Shown in pieces: positions 3,380-48,605 of a DNA stretch of 50,004 bases (the stretch's first letter is position 1; every line of letters begins with the position of its first letter). Position numbers and translations under genes: made by a program. The DNA is taken from the IMG/VR virus record IMGVR_UViG_3300033159_000002, positions 1-50,004 of that record. The stretch is one strand, 5' to 3'. The notes under the pieces were generated by a model, which made no database searches, was not told the DNA's origin, and saw only the letters and a list, made by a program, of their open reading frames with translations.

Positions 3380-3395
3380 TAAACTCCCCAGTTTA
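3380..3395 (+). repeat. TAAACTCCCCAGTTTA recombination-type motif (representative of ~15 copies)
   Basis: Perfect copies (either strand) at 3380, 11846, 14893, 15757, 16025, 16391, 23736, 25677, 37254, 48295; copies with 1-2 mismatches at 13061, 14258, 23475, 30827, 48073. Confidence 0.9.
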
Positions 3396-3425
3396 CCGAA
3401 CTAAAAGCTAAAGATCACGCAGATC

Positions 3426-3552
3426 TTAACACGGTTTTATTTTCATACTGGTGAAACCAAAAAAGGGCCGAGAAAAGTAGGGAAAGGTTCGAGATGCTAT
3501 TATATAGCAAAAGTGCGAGGTAAGGAAAAAAGGGTGACGTTAAGTCGAACTG
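3426..3552 (-). repeat. Dispersed non-coding repeat, copy 1
   Basis: Reverse complement CAGTTCGACTTAACGTCACCCTTTTTTCCTTACCTCGCAC... matches 30851, 38799 and 23265. Confidence 0.9.
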
Positions 3553-3580
3553 AGCCTAGCAGTTCATGGTAGGGAGCTGG

Positions 3581-3892
3581 CTAAGCACCATATGTCTGCT
3601 GTCTCCAGTACCAGTAGTATGTTAACGAGATTACAACGATACCGAGAGCAATTAGTACGGCGACGGCGTATTGGTTTGAAAGCACTGCCAGAATGTAACT
3701 ATAAACCACATAAAGATCTTGATAAATAGCTAAAGTCCATGCAACTTGGGGAGACGGTGCAGAAGAAACCATGTCTTTTGTAGGATTAAGTATAAACGAT
3801 ATACCTTGCAGTATCGAGGAGAAGATGAAAATCACAAATAAGGCCATTACTATTATTGACACAATTGAGATTTGTTCCTGTTGTTGAGCCAT
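3581..3892 (-). CDS. Small membrane protein (2-3 TM), possible virion component
   Basis: Long hydrophobic segments. Confidence 0.7.
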   Translation of the reverse strand: MAQQQEQISIVSIIVMALFVIFIFSSILQGISFILNPTKDMVSSAPSPQVAWTLAIYQDLYVVYSYILAVLSNQYAVAVLIALGIVVISLTYYWYWRQQTYGA

Positions 3893-3913
3893 AAAAAAGA
3901 ATCTGTACGCACA

Positions 3914-9873: not shown

Positions 9874-10884
9874 TCATATGATCACCTCAAGCTTTCTTAA
9901 CAAGGTTGGTTCTCCTAGCTCATGGCCGCACCTCGGACATTTTCCGCCGAACATTGACTTTATTTCTGATGGAGCTCTTACACCATAATAGTCCTGCCCT
10001 ACCTTTTCAAACCTATACAACTCATATCCGCAGCTTTTACATACGTACCTTATAGGCCCTAAAACCTCTACTATTTCCTTATATCTGTGCCTTATGATCG
10101 TTTCAGAAATATTCAGTGCTTTTGCTACTTCTTTTTGTGATTTCCTATTGTCCATTAGTATAGCCACCACATACACCGCAGCAGCGCTTAACGTTAAGTA
10201 ATTGCCGCTAATTAGCCCATTCTTATACATGTAGTCTATCAGCTCTGCAGCTTTTGTCCCTATAATCGGCGGTAGGTTTAATTTGTCAACTATTTTAGGG
10301 ATATATTTGGTCGGTATTATTGTAGGCCTGAATTCTGGGATAACTGTTTTTATCCTCTTCGTGGCCTGCCAGAACTCGCTTATGGAAACATCAAACTTTG
10401 CCTTAAATTCCTGCAAAGATATAGGCACATTATTCATTTGGCACGAATAGTATAATACTGCGGCAATTAGCGCATTTAAACTTATCCTCCTTTCTAACCC
10501 ATTCTCAATTAGCCTTCTTAGTATAAGTGCGGCAGTTTCTTTCACATGTTTTGGTAGATCTAGTTTTGATGCTTCTCTGTTAAGCCTTGAAAGGTATGTC
10601 ACTAATTTTTTCTCCCTAGTAGATGAGATCCTACTCCAGTTATGTAACCTTTGCATTTTCATTAGCTTTATCCTATCTTTTACCTTAGCATATCTTCCTA
10701 TCGTGGTTGAAAGGCCTTCATCGTGGATTTTTAGGGTCAGTGGGGATCCAGTCCTTTCCCGCTCTAAGACGTCCTCATGATTATATACTCTCCATTCTGG
10801 TCCTAGGTCTACAACTCTGTCCTCTATAACTTCCCCTGTCTCTGTGTCAACGTACTCTCCTCTTTCAGGGTCAAAGATTATCAT
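9874..10884 (-). CDS. tfb: Transcription initiation factor B (TFB/TFIIB) homologue with C-terminal Zn-ribbon fusion
   Basis: [38 protein letters not shown], two cyclin repeats, [25 protein letters not shown], then CKSC...CPRC. Confidence 0.92.
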
Positions 10885-11229: not shown

Positions 11230-11481
11230 TCACCCCTTAAACTCCTTAGTTTTACGTAATTCGCGTAAAACTGACTTTAGGTGTCTAGTTTGAGCGTTAT
11301 AGTCTTTGATCTGTATCGCAATCTCAATCGCCCTCATTAGTATATCGTTTTGTTTCTTGAGCTTCATGTTTTCTTCTTCAAGCTTCTTAATCTTGTTCTG
11401 TAACATGGTTATAGTGTCTATGGCTTTAGCGTATTGTTGTTCTAATTCCTGATTTCTCCTTATTATCTCACTAACCGTCAT
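11230..11481 (-). CDS. Coiled-coil protein
   Basis: Heptad-rich; RBS GAGGGTG before ATG 11481. Confidence 0.65.
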   Translation of the reverse strand: MTVSEIIRRNQELEQQYAKAIDTITMLQNKIKKLEEENMKLKKQNDILMRAIEIAIQIKDYNAQTRHLKSVLRELRKTKEFKG

Positions 11482-11608
11482 TTTCAACACCCTCTTTGGA
11501 GATCTTTTCTATCAAAACTAGCACTTTTTTCTTAATCGTAACGCAGTTCATATAGTCAGCGTCTTCGTAGATATTCTCTAAAAGCGTTAACAGAGTGCTC
11601 TTCTTCAT
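11471..11608 (-). CDS. Small protein (45 aa, MKKSTLLTLLENIYEDADY...), absent from the ORF track
   Basis: Fills the operon gap and overlaps both neighbours. Confidence 0.55.
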   Translation of the reverse strand: MKKSTLLTLLENIYEDADYMNCVTIKKKVLVLIEKISKEGVENDG

Positions 11609-11796
11609 ATCTCCTGTACCCTCATTTCGTTGTTTTTGTAATTCTCTTCAACGAAATTTTTCTTAATTTTCTTCATGGACAAGTACGATTTGATAGCTTC
11701 TCTGATTACCTCACTTCTCACTTGTTTAGTATTTATGCAGTATAGGTCTAGTTGCTGTAACAATTCCTCCTCTAATTTAAATGTCACAACTCTCAT
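11605..11796 (-). CDS. CopG/RHH transcriptional regulator
   Basis: MRVVTFKLEEELLQQLD...RSEVIREAIKSYL; RBS GAGGTGA. Confidence 0.88.
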   Translation of the reverse strand: MRVVTFKLEEELLQQLDLYCINTKQVRSEVIREAIKSYLSMKKIKKNFVEENYKNNEMRVQEI

Positions 11797-11818
11797 CTTC
11801 TTCACCTCATGGTAATTC

Positions 11819-12130
11819 TTATTCGTCTTCCTCACCTTTTTGCGGTAAACTCCCCAGTTTACCGTCAAATTCTGATACCATTTGCCTCAAACTTAAATCT
11901 CTTTTCTCTTCAATTAATTGTAACTGTTTTGCGTAATAATGTAATCTTGTCCCGACTTCTGCTTCATCATACTCCATTTTGTTATGTAAGTAGAATTCTA
12001 AATTCTCTATAATCTCTTTCAATTCCTTGTAAATTCTTATTGCCGTCCTATCAATCCTAGTTAATCTCTGAGCCTTATAGGCTAGAGCATACGCTTTCTC
12101 TAAGTGCTGTTGCAAAGTAGTTTCAGCCAT
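11819..12130 (-). CDS. Hypothetical helical protein
   Basis: Operon member with RBS; its C-terminal KLGSLP is encoded by a motif copy. Confidence 0.7.
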   Translation of the reverse strand: MAETTLQQHLEKAYALAYKAQRLTRIDRTAIRIYKELKEIIENLEFYLHNKMEYDEAEVGTRLHYYAKQLQLIEEKRDLSLRQMVSEFDGKLGSLPQKGEEDE

Positions 12131-12410
12131 TCCTCCTCACCTCCTTAATTTCCATTAAATTCTTTCTGTAAACATTGTATAACTCATTTACATGATGACA
12201 TAAGAAGCCGTGGGCTCCAGCTTCACATGAGCAGGAGAAGCGGATCCAGCCATTATCAATAATAATCTCTGTGTGGTGGTATGTAGTCGGCCTAGAGCTA
12301 CTAGCTACGTCTCCGCTTACCCTAATTATTCCATGCTCGTCCTCTTCAATAAGGATTATTTTGACTTTCTTATCGGGTGATATGTATACGTAATTAGCAG
12401 TAGTGCTCAT
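12123..12410 (-). CDS. SWIM zinc-finger protein
   Basis: FSCSCEAG..FLCHH (CxC-xn-CxH). Confidence 0.8.
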   Translation of the reverse strand: MSTTANYVYISPDKKVKIILIEEDEHGIIRVSGDVASSSRPTTYHHTEIIIDNGWIRFSCSCEAGAHGFLCHHVNELYNVYRKNLMEIKEVRRNG

Positions 12411-12763
12411 TCTCCCACCTCAACCTTCACGAATTTTATTTTCCCTTGATCTAGGAATTGCTTTATCTCATCCTCTTTTAGTACACGACCTTCCTCTAGC
12501 CTTATAGTTAGAATTAGTGCTATTATTATATCCCCTGCATTTGCAACTATACTTATTCTATTCTCTTTCAGCTGCGTAGAACACATCGTATTTATTAAGT
12601 CAACAGTAGCCTTATGGCCAACAGCATTAACCAGATCCTCAGCATTCTTTATTGTTTCACAGAATTCCTTCTCATCGGTCTCTTCGAATTTTGCTGTAAC
12701 CTGTCTATGTTTCTGTAACTTCAGCATGCTAGGACTGAAAGAATTAGTTAAGAAGACAGTCAT
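12407..12763 (-). CDS. acrIII-1: AcrIII-1 (DUF1874) viral ring nuclease, anti-type III CRISPR
   Basis: FLTNSFSPSML, NAVGHKAT (catalytic His), ENRISI, GD and RLEEGRVL motifs of the STIV B116/SIRV1 gp29 family. Confidence 0.9.
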   Translation of the reverse strand: MTVFLTNSFSPSMLKLQKHRQVTAKFEETDEKEFCETIKNAEDLVNAVGHKATVDLINTMCSTQLKENRISIVANAGDIIIALILTIRLEEGRVLKEDEIKQFLDQGKIKFVKVEVGE

Positions 12764-13113
12764 TCCTCCTCAGCCTCCTCTTCTTGAGACTGTAGGATCT
12801 TTATCGCTATCAGAACACTCTCAGCCTCCTCCTTAGCCTTCTGTATCACCCACTTCCTTGCTCGAGGGTTGGCTAAAACTACAGCCAGTATGGTATCATT
12901 CGCTAGGTGGATCTTACCGTTTATGGCTTTATGGACTGCAGTCCTGCTCAGCAACTCTTTCAGATCTTCAGAAAACTCCTCTGCGAATTCTTTTCTTGCT
13001 TCTTTAGATAAAGACTCTACTATTTTTGATAAAAAAGACAAAAGAAGATCTTCCTCCCCATCAACTGGGGAGTTTCCCGAAGCCACAACTGAGCCCATAT
13101 TTCCACTCTCCAA
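12760..13113 (-). CDS. Hypothetical protein, possible HTH
   Basis: LSRTAVHKAING helix motif; first gene of the leftward operon. Confidence 0.6.
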   Translation of the reverse strand: MESGNMGSVVASGNSPVDGEEDLLLSFLSKIVESLSKEARKEFAEEFSEDLKELLSRTAVHKAINGKIHLANDTILAVVLANPRARKWVIQKAKEEAESVLIAIKILQSQEEEAEEE

Positions 13114-13221
13114 TGTTTAAAGAGTATTACTTATTTATAAACTTTTCTACCCTCTCAAAGGGATATTTCATTTTCAGCTTACTCCGTCCGCTTTAAATAG
13201 TAATAAAGATAGTAATATATT

Positions 13222-13413
13222 ATGGGATCAGTTATGGAGAATGATATATATTTACAAGGATTCCTAGACTCCCTCGAATTAGCTATCCGTAAAGTGTCAA
13301 CTGCAAACTCGAAAGAAGAAGCACTAAAACTATTACTAGCTATGAAGGAAAATATCGAATCAAGAAAGATAGCTAGGCTTGAACGTATGTTAGACGAGCT
13401 TAAGACATTGTGA
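13222..13413 (+). CDS. Small helical protein whose 3' end is altered by the MITE insertion
   Basis: Leaderless with TTTAAATA TATA; the stop codon lies within the element's left end. Confidence 0.7.
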   Translation: MGSVMENDIYLQGFLDSLELAIRKVSTANSKEEALKLLLAMKENIESRKIARLERMLDELKTL

Positions 13414-13732
13414 GCTACCCCTCCTTGAAGGGCGAGGCTTTACGCCCCCCTTATATTTAAATACCTCTTTGCAAAAATCTCTTAGTGACGCTAATGACGC
13501 TCCTCCCCAGCTCGATTGAGGGCTTAATGGGACTGTGGGAGGAGCAAGCAGTGACGCCTCTTTCCTTTAAGGGACTAGAGCTCGGCAATGAAAGTCCCCC
13601 TTTCAAGTGGGAGTGGTTCTCTGAGCCACTCGACTGCCCGCCAAATGAGGGATGTAAACCCGAACCGATGGTGGGAACGATGAACCCTCTGGAAGGGAAC
13701 CCTCGACCCTTCCAGGGCGGGGAGGAAGTCAG
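13404..13732 (+). mobile_element. Non-autonomous IS200/IS605-derived element (SMN1-like MITE) retaining the tnpB 3' end/omegaRNA region
   Basis: Left end GTGAGCTACCCCTCCTTGAAGGGCGAGGCTTT after CTTAA; right end ...GATGTAAACCCGAACCGATGG...CCTCGACCCTTCCAGGGCGGGGAGGAAGTCAG; ~330 bp; no tnpA or intact tnpB. Confidence 0.8.
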
Positions 13733-13800
13733 TTCTTAGGGTATTACGCTTTATACTAACAAAAGAATTTTTATTTAGAATTCTCAAACTCTTAGAGAGT

Positions 13801-14133
13801 GTGAAAACAATGAAGAAAGAAAAGGTTACTATACTTACGAACGAGATAAAGGTACTCTGCCTACTATATAATGAGAAATTAACAAGGGCGGAAATATCAC
13901 AAAGGACAGGGTTAGATTATTCAAGTATAAGCTACATCACATTGAGGCTAGAATCACTAGGTCTCATTAGGATAGTAGGAACCAAGCATGTAAAGAGAGG
14001 ACCTTTAGAGGATGTATACGAAATCACTGAGAAGGGTATCCAGGAGATAAAACAGGAACTTGACAGAGTGTGGAATTATATGGAAACTTTACTACGAATA
14101 AAAGAAACCGCTACAGTTCCAGTAACAGGGTAA
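13801..14133 (+). CDS. Winged-HTH transcriptional regulator (MarR/PadR/ArsR-like)
   Basis: LTRAEISQRTGLDYSSISYITLRLESLGLI...YEITEKG. Confidence 0.85.
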   Translation: MKTMKKEKVTILTNEIKVLCLLYNEKLTRAEISQRTGLDYSSISYITLRLESLGLIRIVGTKHVKRGPLEDVYEITEKGIQEIKQELDRVWNYMETLLRIKETATVPVTG

Positions 14134-14275
14134 AAAGAAAACGAAGGGGGCGAAGCTCAATGAAACTATTATCTTCGATCCTTATAAGCTTTACGCTTGT
14201 TTTAGTCCTCTTCTTTATCATGCTACAAGTAGAATTCTCGATTGAAAGAATAGACGATAAACTAGGGGGTTTACC

Positions 14276-14914
14276 ATGATTGTCGGTATCGGGAAAGGTC
14301 CTTTGGCAGACTTTGTTAACAAAAACTTCAGATGTGAGTATATTTACGCGTATCCTAAGTTCTTCGACAATAAAGTCCTATTGCTAGAGAAGAGAGACAG
14401 AGCATATATTCATTATATTAAATTATTAATAAGGAATATGTACAGAGTAAAGATAGCGTTATGGCCAGATTATATCTCATATAAAGTTGCAGCAAAGATA
14501 GCTAACCTAGATCTGTTACGTAATATAAGCTTCATAGTCCCTATTCACAGTCTTAGTGATGTTGAAATAGGAGAAGAGTTAGAGGCCCAAGGTTTCAGGG
14601 TATTCTATGGGTATGCATCTGATAATAAGTACCGGGACTATGAAATCGATGAGTTTTTAAGAGAGGCTAAGGGGCCTCTGTGGTACCTCGGCGTTAGTAC
14701 GAAGAAAGAGCTAAAAGAATTACTACTCTACAGCTTTGACGGCTTTGACGTCACAGGGTACCTCTTCGGCAGAAATGAGAATAGGAAGGATCACAAGGTA
14801 CTTAAGAAAAACGTAGAAGAGCTACTTAGGACTGTATCTAAGCCTCATGGTAAACAAACGTCATTGTATGATTTTTCTAGAATACAAGATGATAAACTGG
14901 GGAGTTTACCATGA
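14276..14914 (+). CDS. Hypothetical protein, possibly a TGT/DpdA-like TIM-barrel remnant
   Basis: ALWPD, IVPIH, LWYLG and FDGFD spacing reminiscent of tRNA-guanine-transglycosylase-like proteins (weak). Confidence 0.4.
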   Translation: MIVGIGKGPLADFVNKNFRCEYIYAYPKFFDNKVLLLEKRDRAYIHYIKLLIRNMYRVKIALWPDYISYKVAAKIANLDLLRNISFIVPIHSLSDVEIGEELEAQGFRVFYGYASDNKYRDYEIDEFLREAKGPLWYLGVSTKKELKELLLYSFDGFDVTGYLFGRNENRKDHKVLKKNVEELLRTVSKPHGKQTSLYDFSRIQDDKLGSLP

Positions 14915-14941
14915 TCCACGTGAAATGGGGGTGAAAAGATA

Positions 14942-15685
14942 ATGTTGAGGCCTACCCTTACACAATTGTTAGATGTGTACTTCCAAACTGAGAATGAAGA
15001 GGAAAAAATAAACTTAATCAAAGATATTGCAATAACGCTGAAGTATGATATAGTCGCAGCTCTGAGTAATGCAGGGGACGATGTAAAACTCAAGGACGTC
15101 GTTACAGATACTAAACGTAAACTAATCCTCATTAAGTTTTACCTTACAAACCAATACCTAGCTGCTAAGGATTTCGTCATAGCTATTAAATTCTCTACAC
15201 AAAAAAGCAAACCATTGGTTCCAGCGCAGATAGAGAAATACGTAAGAAAAATCAAGGGCTGGATAGCTGCAAAACTTTACAGGAAACAATACCCCTACGA
15301 CCTAACATACATTATTATAGGACCTAAATTCACAAAAGGAGTTTATACTATGAGGAGAGAAATAGAGGACGGAAAGTATTTCTACATAGCCACTCCTGAT
15401 ACGCTCATAGAAGTGATTGAGAATTTGGTAGAGTACTTTAAGGCCAGGGCAGTGGCGTTCGCGGAAAGGCTAATGGAAACAAAAAGAAGCCTAGAAAGCA
15501 AGGGGATAGAAGGGAGGTTTGATAAAGGTATTGATGCAATAAAACAATTAGTAAAAATATCACATAAAATTAAAGGGATTGTAACGAAGGTAAGGCAGTT
15601 AATGGAAAGGGATTATTATGAAATTGCAGCAAAGCTTATAGAGGACGAAAGCTACCTGGATGAGATAGATTCGTTCTTGCGATAA
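14942..15685 (+). CDS. Hypothetical protein, possible degenerate restriction-endonuclease fold
   Basis: FVIAIK...QIEKY...YIIIGPKFT pattern; catalytic acidic residue not evident. Confidence 0.4.
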   Translation: MLRPTLTQLLDVYFQTENEEEKINLIKDIAITLKYDIVAALSNAGDDVKLKDVVTDTKRKLILIKFYLTNQYLAAKDFVIAIKFSTQKSKPLVPAQIEKYVRKIKGWIAAKLYRKQYPYDLTYIIIGPKFTKGVYTMRREIEDGKYFYIATPDTLIEVIENLVEYFKARAVAFAERLMETKRSLESKGIEGRFDKGIDAIKQLVKISHKIKGIVTKVRQLMERDYYEIAAKLIEDESYLDEIDSFLR

Positions 15686-16436
15686 CGGACGAACAAACAA
15701 ATACCTAATTCTATCAATAATTTTTCTCACTCTTGTAATAAAAATTCAAACATCGGTAAACTCCCCAGTTTAATTTCAAAATCTTTCTTCTACTTTATCA
15801 AAAATTCTTTACAATAAACTCCTTAACTGTTGAGCAGAATTTCAAAAAGAGTCTGTGGGTTTAAAGTAATTTCAGATTGTTTTCCAATTTTGTAATTTTA
15901 ATATGAACTGACCCTAGGGAGACGTGAACCTTCAGATTTTCTATTAATACCGTTATTATACTTAATAAATAGGAATAATTAACAAAATACGTACTTTTTT
16001 TCAAGTTACTGCTTTAAAATTGAATAAACTCCCCAGTTTACTCATAAGAATTACTAGGAAAGTTGAAAGAACGTGAACTACATAGGAGTGTAAAAAACGC
16101 CCATGAATTATGTAACGATATGAGGATCCAGGGTGAAAGCCCTAATGAATCAAAAATTATGCTTATCCTTCCTCCTATCCCTAGTAATATAAGAGTATAC
16201 TATATAACTCTAGTAATAATGAATGCCTAATGGCTGTTTGTGCCTATCCTGTAGGCCTTCCTAATGGTGTGGTGTGATAGGAAACCCTAGGACTGTGGGG
16301 CCCCTAGGCTATAGGATCTAAGTTATGCTTCCCTTATTTTTTTAATAATATAATAAGGGGGTTAATTTCACTGAGTTGTTACTTTTTCAATAAACTCCCC
16401 AGTTTACTGAGAAAAATCAACGCAAAGTTAATAAAC

Positions 16437-16754
16437 ATGTGTTGTTATATTCAACTTATGAAAAAGATTTCAAAAAACAATTATTATAGCACTGCTATTG
16501 ATAGTATAGCTAATTCGATGAGTGAAGAGGAATACATAAAGGCCAAGGAGTTCTATAGGTTTCTCGTCGATATAACGAGGTGTAACCACGGTATCTTAAG
16601 GATCGATAGGGAGAAACTTATTGACATTACAGCTGCTTACATGAAATGCACGCCCCTGGAAGCCTATAATATACTAACAAAGATGAAGGGTTACGGTTGG
16701 ATAAAAACCCTAGACAAAGGTTATATTATAGTTGACATAGAAAGGGAGATATGA
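16437..16754 (+). CDS. Putative winged-helix protein
   Basis: EAYNILTKMKGYGWIKTLDKGYI wHTH-like C-terminus. Confidence 0.5.
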   Translation: MCCYIQLMKKISKNNYYSTAIDSIANSMSEEEYIKAKEFYRFLVDITRCNHGILRIDREKLIDITAAYMKCTPLEAYNILTKMKGYGWIKTLDKGYIIVDIEREI

Positions 16755-18993: not shown

Positions 18994-19020
18994 GGTGGTG
19001 ATAAAAAAGGGGGAAGAAGG

Positions 19021-23368: not shown

Positions 23369-24200
23369 AACCGATGTACTCTTACAACTAAACATTGCTA
23401 GAAGACGGATATTAGCACGTTAGGAACTCCTAAATGTCACATACAGCAAAATAATTACTTTGAATTTTTCTCAGTAAACTAGGGAGTTTATACAATTTTT
23501 AAAAATAGGAATAATAGTTATAAGATAGAGTAATAATAAGTGTCTAGTATCCTTCTCGACTTGATTCTATTTTATAGGATTATATTTTTCCTTAGATCGT
23601 TCAAACAAAAATCAATTATTAAATTAATTAAGAATTCAAAAGAGAATGAAGGAAGTACCGCCGTTTATTTTTGTTATTTTACGTCGAATTCATAAGGATA
23701 TATTGATAAGGGTTGCAGCTGTGAAATAAAATCAATAAACTCCCCAGTTTACCGCAAAAAATTGCAAAAATAAAATCATGTATCTATCAATTTCAAACTC
23801 AGATTTTCTAATAGGTCCATGAATTAAAATTTGAAAAACAAGCCATGATTCTTTTATAAATTGTAAACCTAAGTTAGGTCTATATAGCCGTATACAGACG
23901 TAAATTAGGTTCTGACTTTTTTGAAAGACGTTGCTGTTATAAATTCAAAAAATAATACGTAGCCCTCTCAAAAATTCTAAGGAGCTATTAGGGAGCTTCT
24001 AAGAAAATTTAGTGTTATATGCGCTACTAAGGTGCTGTATGCAGCAACAGCAGCAAAAGAGCTCCACGGATTAATCTTTGAGAGGGATTATTTGACAGAA
24101 CATTGAGAAGGAAACCACTTGAAATGAAAGTATAGTGGCAAACGGGAATTAGGAGATAAGAAATAGCACAAACGGAAAAAATTAGGAAAGGAATAAAAAA

Positions 24201-25480: not shown

Positions 25481-25875
25481 TAAAAATTACGTTTTTTTAA
25501 GCTTAAACTAAATCATTATACTGTTTAAGTTAATCTCCCTTTCTCTTTAAATCCTAATCTAAGGCTGTTTATTCTTCCGTTCTTATCATATGCTATAGAG
25601 TTTTCAATTGTTAAGTAAGCAGTGGGAAGCGCTACTCATGGGATCCCAGCTTTCTATGCTCATTAGAAAAATTCAATAAACTCCCCAGTTTACCGCAAAA
25701 AATTCAAGTCAATTCTGCGCTTGAGGAACCTTTGCGCTACATGTGCAAAAAATGGGCCAGCGGTGAAGGCGAATTATATTAATATAATAACGAATAATTG
25801 TTCGTATTTATTTCCTAACTAGTTGGTAGAAAAGTTTAAATATTGGTTTACCAAAGAATATTATGGGGATAAAAA

Positions 25876-30113: not shown

Positions 30114-30842
30114 ATGGACAAGGATGAACTTAAGCGAATAATACTAGAACTTCCCGATAACTCACCGAAGTTGTTGGAGTATTTGAAAGAAGCTAAGGAG
30201 AAAGGATGGACTGATGTTATCGATATGATTGCCGTGAAGTTAGGACTAAAGGAGGCGAAGAAGAAAGGAAAGAGAGAGGAGAGCGAGTTACTTAAGAAGA
30301 TTCTGAAGCCACTGGGCAAAAAGAAGATAGAACATAGTTGGGACTATTCGGTTGATTTTCTCGAAGCCAAGAAAGTCCTCACTAACGCTTACAAACAGCT
30401 ATTTGATCTCAATCTGATGCCCTATGAGGCTTATGTGGCAATTCTCTTGATACAGCTGATTAACGGTGCTAGAATTAAAGAAGCGATCAGAGCGTTCAAA
30501 ACATTCGTGGAATCAAATCAAAGGGAGTTCCAACTAAAAGCAGAAAAGCATGGCAACATAAGGTTCTTCATTATTCCTGAGGTCATTAGAAACAGACTAG
30601 CGTATAAATCGATACTGACAATTGATGATGATAAACTAGAAGCGAGGATAAGGATGTTTGCACGGAAGTACTTGAAGTGTAATACGCATTCGCTACGATA
30701 TGCACTGATCTCCTTTTTGGCAAAAAATGCAACAGATCCAGCACTTATCGCGAAAATAACTGGACATAAGAAGTTGGACAGAATTGTACAGTATACACAG
30801 ACGAAAGACGCGATTGAAATCTTACGTAAACTGGGGAGTTAA
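30114..30842 (+). CDS. Tyrosine recombinase (Xer/integrase-like, minimal)
   Basis: NGARIKEA (R), AEK (K), HSLRY (HxxR), TGHK (H) and QYT (Y) catalytic set. Confidence 0.9.
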   Translation: MDKDELKRIILELPDNSPKLLEYLKEAKEKGWTDVIDMIAVKLGLKEAKKKGKREESELLKKILKPLGKKKIEHSWDYSVDFLEAKKVLTNAYKQLFDLNLMPYEAYVAILLIQLINGARIKEAIRAFKTFVESNQREFQLKAEKHGNIRFFIIPEVIRNRLAYKSILTIDDDKLEARIRMFARKYLKCNTHSLRYALISFLAKNATDPALIAKITGHKKLDRIVQYTQTKDAIEILRKLGS

Positions 30843-37179: not shown

Positions 37180-37525
37180 ATCTATTTATCAGAAGCAAAA
37201 TATTTAAACACATATGTGTGCCCTAGGAAGGACTTTGTTTGAATTTTTCTCAGTAAACTGGGGAGTTTATTCAAAATTTCTAACGGGAATATAAAGTCTA
37301 CGTCAGTAGTTGAAAACCCGCACATCTCTTATTCACCGTCACACCTCGTCGTGATATAGCCACCCATCTGGTGTGACTGTACTCATATTTACATACAAAA
37401 TATATAAACTTCACGGCTTATCAGAAACTGCTGACAACGGCTTTCTGCTCCCTTAAGTACCGAAAAACTTTAAAAAACCTAAACCCTGTTTTTAAATTTA
37501 TACTTGAGTAATATACTTATAAACG

Positions 37526-38798: not shown

Positions 38799-38958
38799 CA
38801 GTTCGACTTAACGTCACCCTTTTTTCCTTACCTCGCACTTTTGCTATATAATAGCACCTCGAACCTTTCCCTAGTTTTTATCCCCCTTTTCTAGTTTCAC
38901 CAGCACGAAATTAAAACCGTGTTAAAGCTTTCCGCCCCCTTAACCCCCTCTTTTGTAA
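38799..38958 (+). repeat. Dispersed non-coding repeat, copy 4
   Basis: See copies 1-3. Confidence 0.9.
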
Positions 38959-39885: not shown

Positions 39886-40470
39886 ATGAAAGTCCTAGTT
39901 GTAGACCTCGATAACACTCTATTTAACACTCAAGCAAGGTATAACGCATGCTTAGCGGAACAAGGTGTCGCGTCTTTAGACTCCCTCCACGGGGAGGCTA
40001 GGAGGAAGTTCTGGGAGTGTTACCAGTCACCACGGTACATGGACTTCGACATCCCTAACAAGGGCGTACTTGACACAGTAAAAAAGGCGAAAGAAAAGGG
40101 TTGGGTCGTTATACTGCTGACTGGAAGGAACGGTGAGACACAGAGAGAAAAAACACTCGAACAACTACAGAAATTTAACGTGCCATATGACTACTTGATA
40201 ATGAGGAACCCCAATGACTATAGGAAAGAGGTAGAGTATAAGCGGGAAATACTTAACGGTCTGAAGGGGTTAGGGGATGTTATACTCATAGACGACAACC
40301 CGGAGGTAAGAAAGTTAGTATCAAAAGCGTTCCCTCCAGACGAAAGTCCAACAATTGATGAGGCAAGGGATCAGGGTGAACTAAACGTTATGTTTTACAC
40401 CAAATACCCACCTGTTATAACTAAGGGGGTGAGCAGAGTTGAAGATGAAGAAGTTTTTGATCTTGAGTAG
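39886..40470 (+). CDS. HAD-superfamily phosphatase (PNKP 3'-phosphatase/acid phosphatase-like)
   Basis: VVDLDNT (motif I), LLTGR (II), K (III), IDD (IV). Confidence 0.88.
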   Translation: MKVLVVDLDNTLFNTQARYNACLAEQGVASLDSLHGEARRKFWECYQSPRYMDFDIPNKGVLDTVKKAKEKGWVVILLTGRNGETQREKTLEQLQKFNVPYDYLIMRNPNDYRKEVEYKREILNGLKGLGDVILIDDNPEVRKLVSKAFPPDESPTIDEARDQGELNVMFYTKYPPVITKGVSRVEDEEVFDLE

Positions 40471-43400: not shown

Positions 43401-43471
43401 TCTTCATAGGGTCAGTCATGGTTATAATATCTACAACATATAGGTTTGCGAGGAGGAGCAGCCAGACATGA
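40439..43471 (+). CDS. Large surface glycoprotein, candidate receptor-binding/adsorption protein with a duplicated beta-sandwich domain
   Basis: Signal peptide; ~185-aa internal duplication (~40910-41440 and ~41475-42000); many sequons; 3 C-terminal TM. Confidence 0.8.
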   Translation: MKMKKFLILSSLLLFILLMPLEVYAVQSFLTFYVNVMDYGTVLMLQNQSNVLTIYEIPSSFSSVPSFQGVQTTGKALEAVENVTLKSGEVALVHEYGVSGFSTQNFLYQQVNVPRIVTHSNSTTSYYSSSTIYVTPDQGYQLQFTPWFGIQNQPVDSVESTGWKVFPYWQNGELVVNSTGASTYGQYIAWKYSPISNVINITIHITSFPVQSNNPGILIASPNVGDQTNIANNGFYALTVNFYDNKIAFHSPTSGFIILDSSLPQPNPNYPFTFSVILTENSAGNVTVQSVYINSTAYTVNVNTPFPWSQIGYVGITPDMGNLFYVSYFSVSPAPYGGVEQFVNNVESTSWKVLPYWENGELVVNSTGASIYGQYIDWRYSPISNTINITIHITSYPTQNGNPGIVVYSPTVGDQSYDGVTGFYALLVDFYGNTIWFHSPTSSYTQLYTSLPQPNPNYPFTFSVILTENSAGNVTVQSVYINSTAYPVNVNTPFPWNQIGYVGIDAEQSNLFYVSYFGVSPFQYGVVKYTVNSISLPSMPDTSSATVLISQLSNGSYAILGVYNGTWHELNLPFANPNGKFTVTFNPVGPVNITLKSSNVLSYGALFSPGNGVLLEAQNAIPPSNPSNWAPLGYVGTNGEVGGGVDWASPQFTPATLNSINYYQGGTIATTDWGTTNFTYYSASINQHLNGQMNYVTVGIGFTSGWANAPSGYYPFQNGFIDMVYIENNSIATSQTPPNVSSMLFFFDPTYITQQGQYINPFTNQTYQLTGSLTREVNDIGVITFLDPKVTNPVIYVPPFTEVIVRNSTSSQIFINYETFPYQTATVPPGNYQITVILLYTAYSFVLINWQGWNVTIYENGQPMIVNDPITQQIQPFDTQGLLSAQIVANPNTKVLTIYLQPLSSGVGTYSPKEIAFPKPAPQLILPLTQQTPFSLSTLTVSGIVTVAMVLAVVIALARANQDLLASIAAGGAVVAVVGIIIHLMPIIFIGSVMVIISTTYRFARRSSQT

Positions 43472-44853: not shown

Positions 44854-45594
44854 ATGACAACAACACTTCCTCCACCTGTAACAGTTCCAGCACCGCCATC
44901 ACCGTCATCAGTAGTACCGTCTTTTTCACCTAGTTTTATTGAATATGCTATGATCGCAATTTTTGCAGGCGTAATAATTTATGTTGCCTATAAACTCTTC
45001 AGTAAACCTAACTACAGGTACTGGTTAAGACTTATTGACGGAAACGAGGAAAAGGAGATCCCGCTGACGAGAATAGACGAGGTCAACTTCGTTAGTGTGA
45101 AGGGGAATATACGTGTGTATAAAGACCCCACAGTGAAGATGATCAAGAGCGGGAGAAGGTATATCCTCTACGGTTGGGGTATACAGCCCTACTACATTGC
45201 TAAAGACCCACAGACGCTTATCAACGTCGGGATCCGGGACTTAATCCTAAGAGTTGGAAACAAGGAAATAAAGTTCGACGGTACGTGGAAGTCGATCGTG
45301 GACTACTACACTTACTTAATAAAAAGTAGGATTGACACAATGAGGGAACTCACGCTTGATACTAATACACAGCTCGTTATAGCGGTCGATTACCCTAGTA
45401 TATTTAAGAGTTCGATCGAGGACTTACTTCACACTAACGTTAAGCATTCGTTAAGGCAGTTAGAGGAAATAGTGAACATAGAGAAGAACGTAACAGCTAC
45501 TAAGTCTACAGATTTCTCGTGGATGAGGTGGCTCATCATCGCGTTCATGATAATGGGCGTATTCCTGTTAGCCTTGTCGGTGATACATAAATGA
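44854..45594 (+). CDS. Two-TM membrane protein
   Basis: N- and C-terminal TM. Confidence 0.75.
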   Translation: MTTTLPPPVTVPAPPSPSSVVPSFSPSFIEYAMIAIFAGVIIYVAYKLFSKPNYRYWLRLIDGNEEKEIPLTRIDEVNFVSVKGNIRVYKDPTVKMIKSGRRYILYGWGIQPYYIAKDPQTLINVGIRDLILRVGNKEIKFDGTWKSIVDYYTYLIKSRIDTMRELTLDTNTQLVIAVDYPSIFKSSIEDLLHTNVKHSLRQLEEIVNIEKNVTATKSTDFSWMRWLIIAFMIMGVFLLALSVIHK

Positions 45595-46898
45595 TCTGCA
45601 GAAAAGTCGTGAGAAACTCCTCAACCGAAGTTCTGAGGAGGCCTGTCGGTTGCGACGAAATTGCTCCTTACACCGATGTTAAAACAGTAGGAGAAGTCAA
45701 AGTGGAGGAGGTTAAAGACTACATAGTAGTTACTGCCGATGACGTGTATGTTTACCCTAAAAGTGTGTGGGAACGTATACAGTTTTATGTTGATTATTTC
45801 AGAAAAAGCGGTGTCTTCCCAAATCCTGGTTTACTCTTCACAGGCCCACCTGGGACTGGGAAAACCACACTATCAAGGATAATTACCGATATGCTAGGAC
45901 TAGACAGAGTATTTTTCAGTTTTGCTGAAGTGTTAGGGCCTTACGTCGGGCAAAGCGAGAAGGGATTTCAGGCAAAAATCGACGAAGCCGTAAGATTGCG
46001 ACCTTCAGCCCTCGTAATCGACGAGGCGGACACTTTACTCATGCAAAGAGAAATTATGATACAAAGGATAGGTGTTTCTTCTGCAGATATTAACATTAAG
46101 TCTATGTTACTCGATACGATGTCCAAGATGAGGGAAAGTGACGTGCTATTTATTGCAATAACCAATATCTCACCTTCTCTTATTGACAGTGCATTGAAGA
46201 GAGAGGGCCGTTTCGGTGAACCAGTCTACGTCCCAGTGCCTACTAAAGACGCGATAGAGATACTCATAGAGAGAAAGTTCCCGCAATTCCTCGATAGACG
46301 GGAAGAATTAGCCTCCAAATTGGCGTCATCAATGCAGAACTTTGCTAATATAGTGTCCTACTTGAAAAGGTTACAATACGGCATAGACAGACTGCCTGAG
46401 GAATCACTTCGCGGTTACAGGATAATTTACGTCAAGAAACCTTATACAGACAGGAGGCTTGAGAGGTTCTTTTCCTCACTCGACTACCCTGAGCTTTACT
46501 TCGTAAAGGCTAACCCAGACCTCGCAATACCCGTGCTCGCTGCTTATTTCGTCTCTGTCGGTAAAGGAAACGTAGTTGTTTATAACGCGAAGGGACTAGA
46601 AGAGGCGATAAAGGTGGCTGAAACGTATAACGCTGTACTCATCGTAGATGAGAGGAGCGGGATACCGATAAAGGAACTGTTCCGGGTAGCAAATGTCCCG
46701 ATCGTTGTGGTAGGAGAGAACGTAACAGCGAGGGAAGTTTTCCATGTGGACGAGTACAACGAGGACATGATCAATATCATCTTCAGTGCGTACAACATCA
46801 AGGCGACACCGAGGAGGTATACCCTAAACGATTTGGAAAGGATTGTTTACCACTGTAAAGGAGGCGATGAGAACTGCGTAAAGAAGTTGAGAGAGTAG
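45591..46898 (+). CDS. AAA+ ATPase (CDC48/Vps4-like classical clade) with a degenerate second domain
   Basis: GPPGTGKT, LVIDEAD, IAITN, and IDSALKREGRF arginine-finger region. Confidence 0.92.
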   Translation: MICRKVVRNSSTEVLRRPVGCDEIAPYTDVKTVGEVKVEEVKDYIVVTADDVYVYPKSVWERIQFYVDYFRKSGVFPNPGLLFTGPPGTGKTTLSRIITDMLGLDRVFFSFAEVLGPYVGQSEKGFQAKIDEAVRLRPSALVIDEADTLLMQREIMIQRIGVSSADINIKSMLLDTMSKMRESDVLFIAITNISPSLIDSALKREGRFGEPVYVPVPTKDAIEILIERKFPQFLDRREELASKLASSMQNFANIVSYLKRLQYGIDRLPEESLRGYRIIYVKKPYTDRRLERFFSSLDYPELYFVKANPDLAIPVLAAYFVSVGKGNVVVYNAKGLEEAIKVAETYNAVLIVDERSGIPIKELFRVANVPIVVVGENVTAREVFHVDEYNEDMINIIFSAYNIKATPRRYTLNDLERIVYHCKGGDENCVKKLRE

Positions 46899-46915
46899 CC
46901 GTATTTTTAGGGGCT

Positions 46916-47935
46916 TTGATGTTTGTCAACGGTATATTATACTTAGAAGTAGCCTCTTTTATAATATACCTATTTTATATACTAGGTGTAGTGTTTACTT
47001 TCCTCTACTTAGTAAAAGAGGATAAGAGGTTTGCCGACTTAATCGTGTTCTTTACATTTATCGCCACATTTACTGCCGTCTCGGTATACAGGCTCCCCTC
47101 ACAAACCGATGAGGAAAGCTTGGTATTATACGCAGCATTCCTCTTCAGGCATGGGGTTAATCCCTATACAACAAACCTCATTAACGCTTATAAGATGTTT
47201 CCCGTAGCTGAACCCGTAGTCACGGTTACACTCACCCCCACCTATTACGTTAACGTGTTCGGTTACCCTGCGTTATATTTCGAGATAGCCTCTGTTATAT
47301 ACCCTCAGATTGCTACACTGGCCACGACTTTCTTGCTTTACCTCTTTCTGAGGTGGAAGGGTAAGGAGAAGTTATTCTTTATCGTCATGTTGATTGAAGA
47401 AAGTTATTCGGCTTTTACAGGTGCGACGTTTGACATAATATCCCTAGCCATTGCAATCATAGCACTTACGACGAAAGGTTGGGTCAGATCGGCACTTATG
47501 GCGCTAAGCGGTGACATTAAGCAATATACGTTACTTTACTTACCGTTTATGTGGAAGGATTATTGGGGTAAGTGGAAAGAACTGGCAAAGAACATCCTCA
47601 TACCGTTGGCCGTTTTCCTAATCCCTAACTTACCCTTCATCTCGTTAAAATGGGCTTTTGATGTTTTAGGCCCTCTCACGCAACCTATAGCGAATCAAGG
47701 TATTTCGATCAGTTTGCTGAATCTGACAGGAGCACCTATACCGCACATTGCATATACTGTCGCTTTCCTAACACTCTACACCGCATTGTTGATATTGTAT
47801 AAACCTAACACTAAGTGGAAGTGGATCCTCCCAGCTTTTATCTGGCTCGTAAGCTGGAGGGATTTAAACTATTTCTTATTCTATATCACGATATGGGTGA
47901 GTAGTTATGAGCTGGAAGGTGCTGATAACGGTTAG
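46916..47935 (+). CDS. Polytopic GT-C-fold glycosyltransferase (GT87-like)
   Basis: TDE...GVNPY, FGYP and IKQY motifs; ~9-10 TM. Confidence 0.65.
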   Translation: MMFVNGILYLEVASFIIYLFYILGVVFTFLYLVKEDKRFADLIVFFTFIATFTAVSVYRLPSQTDEESLVLYAAFLFRHGVNPYTTNLINAYKMFPVAEPVVTVTLTPTYYVNVFGYPALYFEIASVIYPQIATLATTFLLYLFLRWKGKEKLFFIVMLIEESYSAFTGATFDIISLAIAIIALTTKGWVRSALMALSGDIKQYTLLYLPFMWKDYWGKWKELAKNILIPLAVFLIPNLPFISLKWAFDVLGPLTQPIANQGISISLLNLTGAPIPHIAYTVAFLTLYTALLILYKPNTKWKWILPAFIWLVSWRDLNYFLFYITIWVSSYELEGADNG

Positions 47936-48605
47936 TCTTATTGTACTCGAAATGCTCACGATTTCGTTATTGTTTAAGCCGACGTTACCGCTGACGGTCT
48001 ACATTGTAAGGGTCTACGACGTCGGTGACGTAGGGTACTGGGACGTAGTGTGCTTAAACGTTACCAATCACGGAAACTCCCCAGTTTACCCTATTTTCCT
48101 GCTTAACGAATTCGGCAGTGAGAAGAGGTGGGTGGTCTCGAGCCAAATCATGGCTTATGCACCTTATAACTGCACATTGCCTGTTATCCCGCCCCACTCA
48201 TGGCGTCTGATCAACATCTCTGCACCGTCACCCCTTTACTTCATACCGCCTTTTACCAAGATCTTCGTCCAGGTCTACTCGGGATATAATTTTGTAAACT
48301 CCCCAGTTTACGTAACACCTAATATAACTAGGCCTCCTATCATCAACCCAGACTTTTCCGTACTGTACTATAGCGGAAAGTATAACGAGGTGTTACCGTG
48401 GGGCTGGTACATCGAGCTTACTCCAGGAACCAAACTCTCCTATAACAACGGCGTTATTGTAAACGGAACTGCAATATTTTACCAACCAGTTTTCGGAAAC
48501 GTGACCGTGATAGGATATAATATCTATTACACGGTCTCTGGTAACGTCCTGTACATTTACGTCCATAACGGTTATGTGAGGGGTGTTGTGGAAAATGGGT
48601 CGTGA
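47907..48605 (+). CDS. Membrane-anchored extracellular beta protein
   Basis: N-terminal TM and many sequons; two recombination-motif copies encode NSPVY. Confidence 0.7.
   Translation: MSWKVLITVSLIVLEMLTISLLFKPTLPLTVYIVRVYDVGDVGYWDVVCLNVTNHGNSPVYPIFLLNEFGSEKRWVVSSQIMAYAPYNCTLPVIPPHSWRLINISAPSPLYFIPPFTKIFVQVYSGYNFVNSPVYVTPNITRPPIINPDFSVLYYSGKYNEVLPWGWYIELTPGTKLSYNNGVIVNGTAIFYQPVFGNVTVIGYNIYYTVSGNVLYIYVHNGYVRGVVENGS

What the first reader, a model, noticed from the sequence alone, without database searches (positions are those of the whole stretch)
3380..48310. About 15 copies of the plasmid recombination motif TAAACTGGGGAGTTTA, one forming the end of the tyrosine recombinase gene
Seen: 10 perfect and 5 near-perfect copies in both orientations, with inverted arms around an asymmetric core (extended at 3376: TCGGTAAAC-TCCCCA-GTTTACCGA). 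One copy encodes the last residues and stop of the recombinase (KLGS*, 30827-30842). Flanks are shared between copies (23475, 37254 and 16391; 23736 and 25677). Known: this motif borders variable segments in pNOB8/pING-type Sulfolobus conjugative plasmids. Inference: a site-specific cassette-shuffling system (deletion, inversion, exchange with plasmids) driven by the encoded recombinase or a host Xer.
Basis: partly seen in the sequence, partly recalled or inferred. Interest (0 to 1): 0.72.

Follow-up and report, generated by a model that had tools for sequence, protein, structure and literature searches.

The report
Plasmid recombination motif inside an archaeal virus
The 16-base motif is real and is the known "recombination motif" of Sulfolobus conjugative plasmids, but this sequence is a complete hot-spring archaeal virus that captured a plasmid gene block, and the motif tracks a small plasmid-type protein, not the virus's own integrase.

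Summary
Observation confirmed: 10 perfect, 3 one-mismatch and 2 two-mismatch copies, against 0.06 expected.

The window is not a plasmid. It is a complete circular genome of about 49.9 kb with a 127-bp terminal overlap. It belongs to a large tailed spindle virus related to Sulfolobales viruses YNP1, YNP2 and SMV1. It carries a module of about 5.5 kb (11230-16754) derived from pNOB8/pING-type conjugative plasmids, and 8 copies lie in that module.

Seven plasmids hold 7-17 copies each. YNP2 holds 15. YNP1, SMV1 and ATV hold 1, 0 and 0, although all three encode the same integrase family.

Copies are conserved at the DNA level in the window, YNP2 and pNOB8. At the same positions in SMV1 and YNP1 they drift at about the background rate.

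One gene, a 117-aa all-helical protein (12760-13113, minus strand, here called F7), is present in every motif-rich element and absent from every motif-poor one.

Copies sit at gene junctions and at the edges of mosaic segments. An inverted pair flanks an inverted integrase segment in YNP2.

Verdict: a known element in a new kind of replicon. Shuffling at the motif is supported. The claim that the encoded recombinase drives it is not.

The parts
3380..3395 (-). Perfect copy with 9-bp extended arms (3376-3399). It lies in a 237-bp intergenic insert that YNP1 and YNP2 lack, next to a copy of the R120 repeat.
11238..11253 (-). Degenerate copy (3 mismatches) at the 3' end of the ZapB-like gene. It corresponds to a conserved plasmid site.
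11846..11861 (-). Perfect copy in the sense direction, near the 3' end of the 103-aa gene (read as KLGSLP...). It lies just upstream of the RHH (aCcr1-family) gene. Downstream of this site the plasmids differ in gene content.
13061..13076 (+). Copy with 2 mismatches and a perfect 12-base core. It lies antisense in the 5' end of the F7 gene (codons NSPV). The same position is kept in the plasmids and in the S. acidocaldarius element.
14258..14273 (+). Copy with 2 mismatches, ending 2 nt before the ATG of the 212-aa gene. It is the left member of a direct pair that brackets that gene.
14893..14908 (+). Perfect copy that encodes the C-terminus KLGSLP* of the 212-aa gene. It is the right member of the bracketing pair, and homology to SMV1 starts just after it.
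15757..15772 (-). Perfect copy in the plasmid-derived non-coding block. It is perfect in pNOB8 and degraded in SMV1.
16025..16040 (-). Perfect copy in the same non-coding block. It is perfect in pNOB8 and degraded in SMV1.
16391..16406 (-). Perfect copy with class-B flanks. Homology to SMV1 and pNOB8 ends about 10 bp beyond it.
23475..23490 (+). Copy with 1 mismatch and class-B flanks, in a variable island. Its right flank matches pAH1 25529.
23736..23751 (-). Perfect copy in a variable island.
25575..25710 (-). Long class-B element of about 115-135 bp whose motif lies at 25677-25692. The same element occurs in pARN3 (twice, inverted), pING1 (twice, inverted), pKEF9, pHVE14 and pNOB8.
30827..30842 (+). 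Copy with 1 mismatch that forms the last codons and stop (KLGS*) of the integrase gene. It is kept in YNP1 and YNP2 and absent from SMV1 and ATV. Homology to SMV1 ends inside it, after TAAACT.
37254..37269 (+). Perfect class-B copy between divergent genes. It is the only stretch of 28000-50004 with a near-identical match in plasmids.
48073..48088 (-). Copy with 1 mismatch, antisense inside conserved viral gene 47907-48605 (codons NSPVY). It involves no indel, is kept in YNP2 and has 4 changes in YNP1.
48295..48310 (-). Perfect copy, antisense inside the same gene (NSPVY). It is kept in YNP2 and in relatives L007, L026 and L030, and has 5 changes in YNP1.
11230..16754 (.). Module derived from conjugative plasmids. 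Genes: ZapB-like, RHH/aCcr1, 103-aa, 95-aa, B116-like, F7, winged-helix regulator, 212-aa, 247-aa, a non-coding block and a 105-aa gene. It holds 8 of the 15 copies, plus the degenerate one.
12760..13113 (-). F7, a 117-aa all-helical protein and the candidate motif-recognising factor. It is the only gene whose presence matches motif abundance across elements.
30114..30842 (+). 242-aa tyrosine recombinase of the STSV/SMV family. It was considered as the driver, but it does not co-vary with the motif.

Best explanation
The 16-mer (conserved core AACTGGGGAGTT) is the signature cis-element of the pNOB8/pING family of Sulfolobales conjugative plasmids. The window is a complete genome of a large tailed spindle virus that acquired a plasmid module of about 5.5 kb plus further plasmid-like non-coding pieces. 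Most copies arrived with that DNA.

Shown:
- In elements that keep the motif, it is held constant at the DNA level, in coding DNA (both orientations and several reading frames) and in non-coding DNA alike.
- It sits preferentially at gene junctions.
- It marks the points where homology between elements switches or where a segment is inverted.

Inferred:
- It is a double-stranded DNA recognition site for a small element-encoded protein. The 117-aa F7 family is the best candidate, because it alone is present in all motif-rich elements and absent from all motif-poor ones, and its own gene carries a copy in its 5' end.
- The two half-sites lie 11 bp apart, centre to centre, which fits a dimeric binder with a regulatory or architectural role.
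- Because the motif is the only sequence shared by otherwise unrelated segments of plasmids and viruses, recombination joins them there. Whether an unidentified site-specific activity or the host's short-homology recombination does this is open. The outcome is gene-sized cassette exchange, deletion and inversion.
- The virus's 242-aa integrase is not the dedicated enzyme.
For: Nature of the replicon:
- The contig has a 127-bp terminal repeat.
- It shares 75-84% nucleotide identity over long stretches with YNP1, YNP2 and SMV1.
- Its large ORFs have no plasmid homologues.

Plasmid module:
- map its genes to the plasmids.

Motif counts:
- Window 15, YNP2 15, YNP1 1, SMV1 0, ATV 0, and seven plasmids 7-17 each.

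DNA-level constraint:
- 48 of 48 motif bases are identical between the window and pNOB8 in a block that is 72% identical overall (about 1e-7 by chance).
- 32 of 32 are identical to YNP2 inside a gene whose aligned region is about 87% identical (mean column identity of the three-way alignment), while YNP1 keeps the amino acids but differs at 9 of 32 bases.
- SMV1 differs at 11 of 48 bases, about the background rate.

F7 association:
- A profile search finds F7 at E<=1e-30 in the window, YNP2, contig L019 (5 copies), 7 plasmids and Stygiolobus contig L087. In YNP1, SMV1 and ATV the best E-value is above 0.2.
- F7 is found in only one deposited virus, YNP2 (two records of the same genome), among 50,697 records.
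- A distant F7 homologue in the S. acidocaldarius chromosome lies among 7 copies of the 12-base core.
- ATV and SMV1 carry other plasmid-derived genes without the motif.

Junction evidence:
-.

Motif logo:
- Sequence information is confined to the 16 bases, and the arms show no compensatory changes.
Against: - No binding has been shown.
- The F7 model (pLDDT 87) has no significant structural or sequence match to any known DNA-binding fold.
- The informative contrast is only three virus lineages with F7 against three without. Within plasmids, F7 and the motif are both backbone features, so their co-occurrence there says nothing.
- The strongly conserved asymmetric centre TGGGGA is unusual for a simple dimer operator. 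It is what a recombinase crossover region would look like.
- The block-end enrichment can be inflated because a conserved 16-mer anchors BLAST extensions, and equivalent sites across plasmids are counted repeatedly.
- Versus YNP1 and YNP2, most copies lie hundreds of bp inside the variable islands, not at their exact edges.
- The perfect identity could also be kept by gene conversion among copies.
Confidence: 0.5

Rival explanations
1. A true site-specific recombination site. A tyrosine recombinase (the viral 242-aa integrase, the plasmid pNOB8-type integrase or host XerA) binds the short inverted arms and exchanges strands in the asymmetric TGGGGA spacer. The products would be deletions, inversions and cassette exchange between viruses and plasmids.
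For: - The architecture is inverted arms around a 6-bp asymmetric centre, and the centre is the most conserved part.
- One copy ends the integrase gene in the window, YNP1 and YNP2.
- Homology to SMV1 stops inside that copy, at the boundary between arm and centre.
- The YNP2 integrase segment is inverted between inverted copies.
- Homology breaks off sharply at the motif edges in pairs of copies that share only one flank.
- From memory: deletion variants of pING and pNOB8 end at this motif (Stedman 2000, Greve 2004).
Against: - No recombinase co-varies with the motif. The viral integrase is present in YNP1, SMV1 and ATV with 1, 0 and 0 copies, and the plasmids use an unrelated integrase that the window and YNP2 lack.
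- Only 5 bp per arm are conserved.
- Some copies lie inside essential-looking genes and at syntenic positions across plasmids, which is more like a maintained binding site than a cassette border.
- Direct perfect copies bracket the 212-aa gene in pKEF9, yet the gene has not been lost.
Confidence: 0.25
2. Passive passenger. The copies have no function in the virus. They came in with recently acquired plasmid DNA, and their association with junctions reflects only the mosaic origin of that DNA.
For: - 12-13 of the 15 copies lie in DNA that YNP1 lacks.
- 8 copies lie in the plasmid module.
- The flanks of 23475, 25677 and 37254 match plasmid non-coding DNA.
Against: - Two copies lie inside a virus-specific conserved gene. 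They are kept exactly between the window and YNP2, while YNP1 changed them at synonymous positions.
- Three of three copies are perfect against pNOB8 despite 28% divergence.
- The loss pattern follows F7.
Confidence: 0.15
3. An RNA-level signal at gene junctions. The candidates are a hairpin, or a processing or translational-coupling site in polycistronic transcripts of the small-ORF operon.
For: - Within ORFs, 43 copies are sense and 18 antisense.
- 21 sense copies lie in the last 60 nt of an ORF.
- About 20 lie directly upstream of a GGTGA-type ribosome-binding site or of a start codon.
Against: - 48 of 109 copies are intergenic and many others are antisense.
- The arms show no compensatory changes.
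- The stem is only 5 A/U-rich pairs, weak at 75-80 C.
- No Rfam family matches.
Confidence: 0.07

Closest known systems
Recombination motif TAAACTGGGGAGTTTA of Sulfolobus conjugative plasmids (pNOB8, pING1, pKEF9, pHVE14, pARN3/4). Cited from memory of Stedman et al. 2000 (J Bacteriol 182:7014) and Greve et al. 2004 (Archaea 1:231); neither paper could be read here.
   Same: The 16-mer is identical. There are many copies per replicon in both orientations (7-17 in the seven plasmids tested). It is associated with the edges of variable or mosaic segments.
   Different: Here it lies in a virus genome. Some copies are inside conserved viral genes. Comparison shows it is kept only where the F7 protein is encoded. 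As far as I know, the papers named no enzyme or binding protein.
Core sites of tyrosine recombinases (loxP, FRT, Xer dif, and SSV-type attP located inside the integrase gene)
   Same: Inverted arms flank a 6-bp asymmetric centre. One copy overlaps the integrase gene. Inversion and deletion-type rearrangements occur at copies.
   Different: The arms are only 5 bp, against 11-13 bp. There are dozens of dispersed copies per replicon. No cognate recombinase co-occurs. The copy lies at the extreme 3' end of the integrase gene, so recombination there would not split the gene as it does in SSV.
Integron attC gene cassettes
   Same: Palindrome-like sites lie at the 3' ends of small genes, mostly in the sense direction, within an operon whose gene content varies between elements.
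   Different: The sequence is exactly conserved, whereas attC conserves structure and varies in sequence. There is no attI or adjacent integron integrase. Copies are also antisense, intragenic and intergenic.
Dispersed palindromic protein-binding sites such as parS or operator arrays
   Same: A near-palindrome of 16 bp whose half-sites lie one helical turn apart. It is dispersed in genes and intergenic DNA and is conserved across diverged replicons. One copy lies in the candidate binder's own gene.
   Different: No ParB-like protein is encoded in the window. The centre is conserved and asymmetric. Binding is untested.

Membership tests
Sulfolobus conjugative-plasmid recombination motif | Sequence TAAACTGGGGAGTTTA in many copies per replicon | tested here: met
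   15 copies in the window against 0.06 expected. 7-17 copies at up to 1 mismatch in pNOB8, pING1, pKEF9, pHVE14, pARN3, pAH1 and pMGB1.
Sulfolobus conjugative-plasmid recombination motif | The replicon is a pNOB8/pING-type conjugative plasmid | tested here: not met
   The window is a circular virus genome related to YNP1, YNP2 and SMV1. It has no TraG/TrbE-type genes. Only a module of about 5.5 kb is of plasmid origin.
Sulfolobus conjugative-plasmid recombination motif | Copies border variable or mosaic segments | tested here: met
   18 one-flank pairs against 20 two-flank pairs, compared with 6% one-flank pairs for control 16-mers. 35 of 289 block ends lie within 30 bp of a copy, against 6.2 and 21 under two null models. 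Caveats are anchoring of BLAST extensions and non-independent sites. Versus YNP1 and YNP2, copies lie inside the variable islands, not at their exact edges.
Sulfolobus conjugative-plasmid recombination motif | Observed recombination products (deletion variants) ending at the motif | not testable with these tools
   This needs reads or plasmid variants. The only indirect case found is the YNP2 integrase inversion between inverted copies.
Tyrosine-recombinase core site (lox/FRT/dif type) | Two inverted recombinase-binding arms of about 11-13 bp around a 6-8 bp spacer | tested here: not met
   The logo of 110 copies shows information only in 5-bp arms plus the 6-bp centre. Flanking positions carry at most 0.6 bit.
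Tyrosine-recombinase core site (lox/FRT/dif type) | Co-occurrence with a cognate recombinase | tested here: not met
   The 242-aa integrase is present in YNP1, SMV1 and ATV, which hold 1, 0 and 0 copies. The plasmids encode a different integrase, which the window and YNP2 lack.
Tyrosine-recombinase core site (lox/FRT/dif type) | Cleavage and strand exchange within the site | not testable with these tools
   Needs biochemistry.
Integron attC cassette array | A same-orientation array of cassettes, each ending in attC, next to intI and attI | tested here: not met
   Orientations are mixed and copies occur inside genes and between genes. There is no adjacent integron-type integrase, and the copies share an exact sequence.
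Miniature mobile element (MITE-like) | Presence or absence as an insertion with target duplication | tested here: not met
   Copies 48073 and 48295 align without any gap to YNP1 sequence that lacks the motif. The 3345-3581 insert is larger and composite.
Operator or architectural binding site of an element-encoded protein | Co-occurrence of the site with a candidate binding protein across independent lineages, with a site at the protein's own gene | tested here: met
   F7 is present in all motif-rich elements and absent from all motif-poor ones. A copy lies in the 5' end of the F7 gene in the window, the plasmids and the S. acidocaldarius element.
Operator or architectural binding site of an element-encoded protein | Demonstrated sequence-specific binding, or a recognisable DNA-binding fold | tested here: inconclusive
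   The AlphaFold model is confident (pLDDT 87) and all-helical, but Foldseek gives E of 1.8 or worse, with Xre/HigA-like hits only at noise level. The PDB profile search finds nothing.
aCcr1-box (target of the RHH cell-cycle regulator) | The 9-bp box A(T/G)G(A)TA(G)A(T/G)TACN | tested here: not met
   The published box (PMC9976878) has no resemblance to the G-run motif. RHH homologues also occur in the motif-free SMV1, YNP1 and ATV.

The most novel reading that the evidence does not exclude
The 12-16 bp site and the F7 protein could form a previously unrecognised recognition pair shared by Sulfolobales conjugative plasmids and some viruses. F7, alone or by recruiting a host or element recombinase, would mark gene junctions as exchange points. 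That would be an archaeal, integron-like system of gene-cassette exchange across the plasmid-virus boundary, and it would explain how plasmid modules enter virus genomes.
Probability: 0.2. Interest if true: 0.7.

Novelty: new member of a known kind. Interest (0 to 1): 0.4.

Why it matters
The motif has been called a recombination motif for two decades, and to my knowledge no protein has been assigned to it.

This virus, its relatives with and without the motif, and the narrow F7 family (17 clusters among 1.84 billion representatives) yield a concrete, testable candidate for the recognising factor. They also provide a natural experiment: where F7 is missing, the sites drift at about the background rate.

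The window also documents gene flow from conjugative plasmids into large tailed spindle viruses, which bears on how archaeal mobile elements build mosaic genomes.

Tried and rejected
- **Literature.** The primary papers (Stedman 2000, Greve 2004) are not held, and full-text searches for the motif found nothing. The "known" status therefore rests on memory plus my own counts in plasmids.
- **RNA genes.** Rfam and tRNA scans of the window found nothing.
- **Conjugative-plasmid reading of the window.** Rejected, because the 1010-aa ORF has no plasmid homologue and the window matches viruses.
- **MITE-like insertion.** Rejected for the intragenic copies, which involve no indel.
- **Hairpin or cruciform selection.** Rejected, because the arms show no compensatory changes.
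- **The RHH (aCcr1) protein as binder.** Rejected, because its box is different and its distribution does not match.
- **Active destruction of the motif in SMV1.** Considered, but 11 of 48 changes is about the background rate, so I claim only loss of constraint.
- **F7 fold.** No significant PDB match by sequence or structure.
- **Genome-wide exact-match scans.** The many single matches in bacterial contigs and in unrelated viral contigs look like chance (my estimate: roughly 30 single matches in the viral collection and a few hundred in the genome collection). Multi-copy loci occur in Sulfolobales, in a 'Thermoprotei archaeon' MAG contig and in a Candidatus Rehaiarchaeum contig. Most of them also carry plasmid-family proteins; L156 had no such hit.
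- **Block-end test.** Significant but open to an anchoring artefact, so I added the one-flank against two-flank control.
- **Distant F7 homologues.** Several look-ups returned only short contigs or nothing.

Full report
**Observation.** A search for TAAACTGGGGAGTTTA with up to 2 mismatches finds 15 copies at exactly the listed coordinates: 10 perfect, 3 with one mismatch and 2 with two. Six are on the plus strand and nine on the minus strand. Shuffled sequence gives 0.06 on average and never more than 1. The extended arms at 3376-3399, the KLGS* ending of ORF 30114-30842 and the shared flanks of the named copies are all present. A 16th, degenerate copy lies at 11238. Thirteen copies keep the 12-base core AACTGGGGAGTT intact.

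**What the window is.** It is the whole IMG/VR contig IMGVR_UViG_3300033159_000002. It has a 127-bp terminal direct repeat, so it is a circular genome of about 49.9 kb. It is not a plasmid:
- Its large ORFs have no plasmid homologues.
- It shares 75-84% nucleotide identity over long stretches with Sulfolobales viruses YNP1 and YNP2, and over shorter blocks with SMV1, SMV4 and ATSV.
- It encodes a TFIIB homologue, an AAA ATPase and giant structural-type ORFs.

Region 11230-16754 differs from the rest. Its genes match the conserved small-ORF operon and neighbouring genes of pNOB8/pING-type conjugative plasmids. They are a ZapB-like protein, an RHH protein of the aCcr1 family, 103-aa and 95-aa proteins, a B116-like protein, a 117-aa protein (here called F7), a winged-helix regulator, 212-aa and 247-aa proteins, a non-coding block and a 105-aa protein. 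Eight of the 15 copies, plus the degenerate one, lie in this module.

**Distribution.**

| Element | Copies |
|---|---|
| Seven conjugative plasmids | 7-17 each (up to 1 mismatch) |
| YNP2 | 15 |
| YNP1 | 1, at the integrase end |
| SMV1 | 0 |
| ATV | 0 |

- In IMG/VR, only the window, YNP2 and one 12-kb contig (L019) hold several copies. The many single hits in unrelated contigs are consistent with chance (my estimate).
- In the genome collection, multi-copy loci occur in Sulfolobales and in two other archaeal contigs (a 'Thermoprotei archaeon' MAG and Candidatus Rehaiarchaeum). Most sit next to conjugative-plasmid genes; one, L156, had no such hit.

**Anatomy.** A logo of 110 copies shows sequence information only within the 16 bases. 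AAC, GGG and GTT never vary among one-mismatch copies. Variation is concentrated at positions 1, 11, 15 and 16. The arms show no compensatory changes, so there is no sign of selection for a hairpin.

Copies fall into three contexts:
- **Gene junctions.** The motif lies in the sense direction at the 3' end of one gene and directly before the ribosome-binding site or start codon of the next. It is often read as KLGSL, or its TAA serves as the stop.
- **AT-rich intergenic sites.** These share the flanks TTGAATTTTTCTCAG...TTCAATTTTTCTAACG. The element around 25677 extends to about 115 bp, and the same element occurs in five plasmids.
- **Intragenic sites.**

Within mechanically called ORFs, 43 copies are sense and 18 antisense, and 48 of 109 copies are intergenic. 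The positions are syntenic across plasmids and the window: inside the 5' end of F7 (antisense), in the 103-165-aa gene, at the end of the ZapB-like gene, on both sides of the 212-aa gene, and in the non-coding block beyond the 247-aa gene.

**DNA-level constraint.**
- In the non-coding block, the window and pNOB8 are 72% identical, yet all 48 bases of three copies are identical (about 1e-7 by chance). SMV1 shares this block at 81-84% but differs at 11 of the 48 bases, including small deletions. That is about the background rate.
- Inside conserved viral gene 47907-48605, two antisense copies encode NSPVY. YNP2 keeps all 32 bases. YNP1 keeps the amino acids but differs at 9 of 32 bases, and there is no indel.
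- The integrase-end copy is kept in the window, YNP1 and YNP2. It is replaced in SMV1 (KLSA*) and in ATV (KLAD*).

So the motif is maintained in some lineages and drifts in others.

**What co-varies with it.** Of all window genes, only F7 (12760-13113, minus strand) matches the pattern.
- A profile search finds F7 at E<=1e-30 in the window, YNP2 (gp53), L019, all seven plasmids and a Stygiolobus plasmid-like contig. In YNP1, SMV1 and ATV the best E-value is above 0.2.
- ATV and SMV1 do carry other plasmid-derived genes (homologues of the 212-aa, 220-aa, 247-aa, 105-aa and RHH proteins) but no motif.
- Among 50,697 deposited virus records, only YNP2 (deposited as two records) has an F7 homologue.
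- The family is tiny: 17 clusters in 1.84 billion representatives.
- A distant member lies in the S. acidocaldarius DSM 639 chromosome. There the 12-base core occurs 7 times in 20 kb and is the most repeated 12-mer. One copy again lies in the 5' end of the F7 gene.

F7 is confidently modelled (pLDDT 87) as all-helical with a long C-terminal helix. It has no significant structural or sequence match, so DNA binding is inferred and not shown.

The viral 242-aa integrase does not co-vary, and the plasmids encode an unrelated integrase. The STSV/SMV integrase family is listed in the review PMC8371274; its text as searched gives no att site for this family. The aCcr1-type RHH binds a different 9-bp box.

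**Recombination at the motif.**
- The block shared with SMV1 (84%) and pNOB8 (72%), 14924-16416, starts just after copy 14893 and ends about 10 bp after copy 16391.
- Homology to the SMV1 integrase gene stops inside copy 30827, after TAAACT.
- Downstream of the copy in the 103-165-aa gene, plasmids carry zero, one or two extra genes. pKEF9 and pING1 have identical left flanks and unrelated right flanks there.
- Among pairs of copies that share at least one 60-bp flank, 18 share only one flank and 20 share both. For other shared 16-mers the figures are 62 and 971. About half of the 18 reflect the long class-B repeat.
- Homology-block ends lie within 30 bp of a copy 35 times out of 289. The expectation is 6.2 under random shifts and 21 when sites are drawn from ORF boundaries. 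A conserved 16-mer can anchor alignments, and equivalent sites are counted repeatedly.
- In YNP2 the integrase segment is inverted relative to the window and YNP1, and it is flanked by inverted copies at 18439 and 19358.
- Against this, versus YNP1 and YNP2 most window copies lie hundreds of bp inside the variable islands and not at their exact edges.

**Interpretation.** The best-supported reading is that this is the known conjugative-plasmid motif, carried into a virus with plasmid DNA. It is a protein-recognised double-stranded site that is maintained only where F7 is encoded. It serves, directly or as a by-product, as the place where unrelated segments are joined. A dedicated tyrosine-recombinase site remains possible, given the conserved asymmetric centre and the inversion. 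That reading lacks a co-varying recombinase, and the conserved arms are only 5 bp. Passive carriage and an RNA-level role are less likely, for the reasons given under the rival explanations.

**Novelty.** The motif itself is known. What is new here:
- its presence in a virus genome;
- its presence inside viral core genes;
- its lineage-specific maintenance or drift;
- F7 as a candidate recognising factor.

Noticed in passing
window 1-127 and 49878-50004: An exact 127-bp terminal direct repeat. The contig is a complete circular genome of about 49.9 kb.
   Followed up: yes
window 3426-3552 (+), 23269-23339 (-), 30850-30930 (-), 38799-38925 (-); L003 (SMV1) 11908-12033: A four-copy repeat of about 125 bp (R120) with a TATA-like centre. 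It usually lies upstream of a gene or operon, and two copies sit right beside motif copies (3380 and 30827). It is probably a shared promoter or leader element.
   Followed up: partly
window 25575-25710; L001 (pARN3) 14269 and 24457; L036 (pING1) 7075 and 15780: A conserved element of about 115 bp that begins with the motif and includes the GGGATCC and AGCGCT palindromes. It occurs as inverted pairs 9-10 kb apart in pARN3 and pING1, bracketing the replication/integration section. The window holds one copy.
   Followed up: partly
L032 (YNP2) 18405-19373 compared with window 30105-31370: The integrase gene segment is inverted in YNP2 relative to the window and YNP1, with inverted motif copies at both ends.
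   Followed up: yes
window 11605-11868 (-): An RHH protein that matches the aCcr1 cell-cycle-regulator family (NCBIfam NF053762, E 3e-19). Viral homologues are reported to block host cell division (PMC9976878).
   Followed up: partly
window 9874-10884 (-): A virus-encoded TFIIB/TFB homologue (Pfam TFIIB repeats, E 1.5e-25), shared with YNP1 and YNP2.
   Followed up: no
window 12407-12763 (-): A gene for a STIV B116-like protein, 92% identical at protein level to one in a Stygiolobus plasmid-like contig (L087) but only 42% to pAH1. Adjacent module genes have different nearest relatives, so the module is a gene-scale mosaic.
   Followed up: partly
window 40899-42002, within ORF 40439-43471: Internal modules of about 500 bp match three places in SMV1 gp10 at about 80% identity. 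This is repeated modular structure in the large structural-type genes.
   Followed up: no
L166 (S. acidocaldarius DSM 639, CP000077 391417-411770): An integrated plasmid-like element with a distant F7 homologue and 7 copies of the 12-base core. The outer motif bases vary there, which shows that the conserved unit is AACTGGGGAGTT.
   Followed up: partly
L045 (Stygiolobus sp. CP850M contig) 2-781: A DNA methyltransferase 91% identical to the one next to the YNP1 integrase lies beside conjugative-plasmid genes and a motif copy. It may be another virus-plasmid hybrid or an integrated element.
   Followed up: no
L067 (Candidatus Rehaiarchaeum fermentans contig JAPDLT010000016.1) 2237-7653: Four motif copies (one perfect, three with one mismatch) and a plasmid-family protein (64% identity to pARN3 15489-16409) in a contig assigned to a non-Sulfolobales archaeon. 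It may be a mis-binned plasmid contig or a wider host range for the plasmid family.
   Followed up: no
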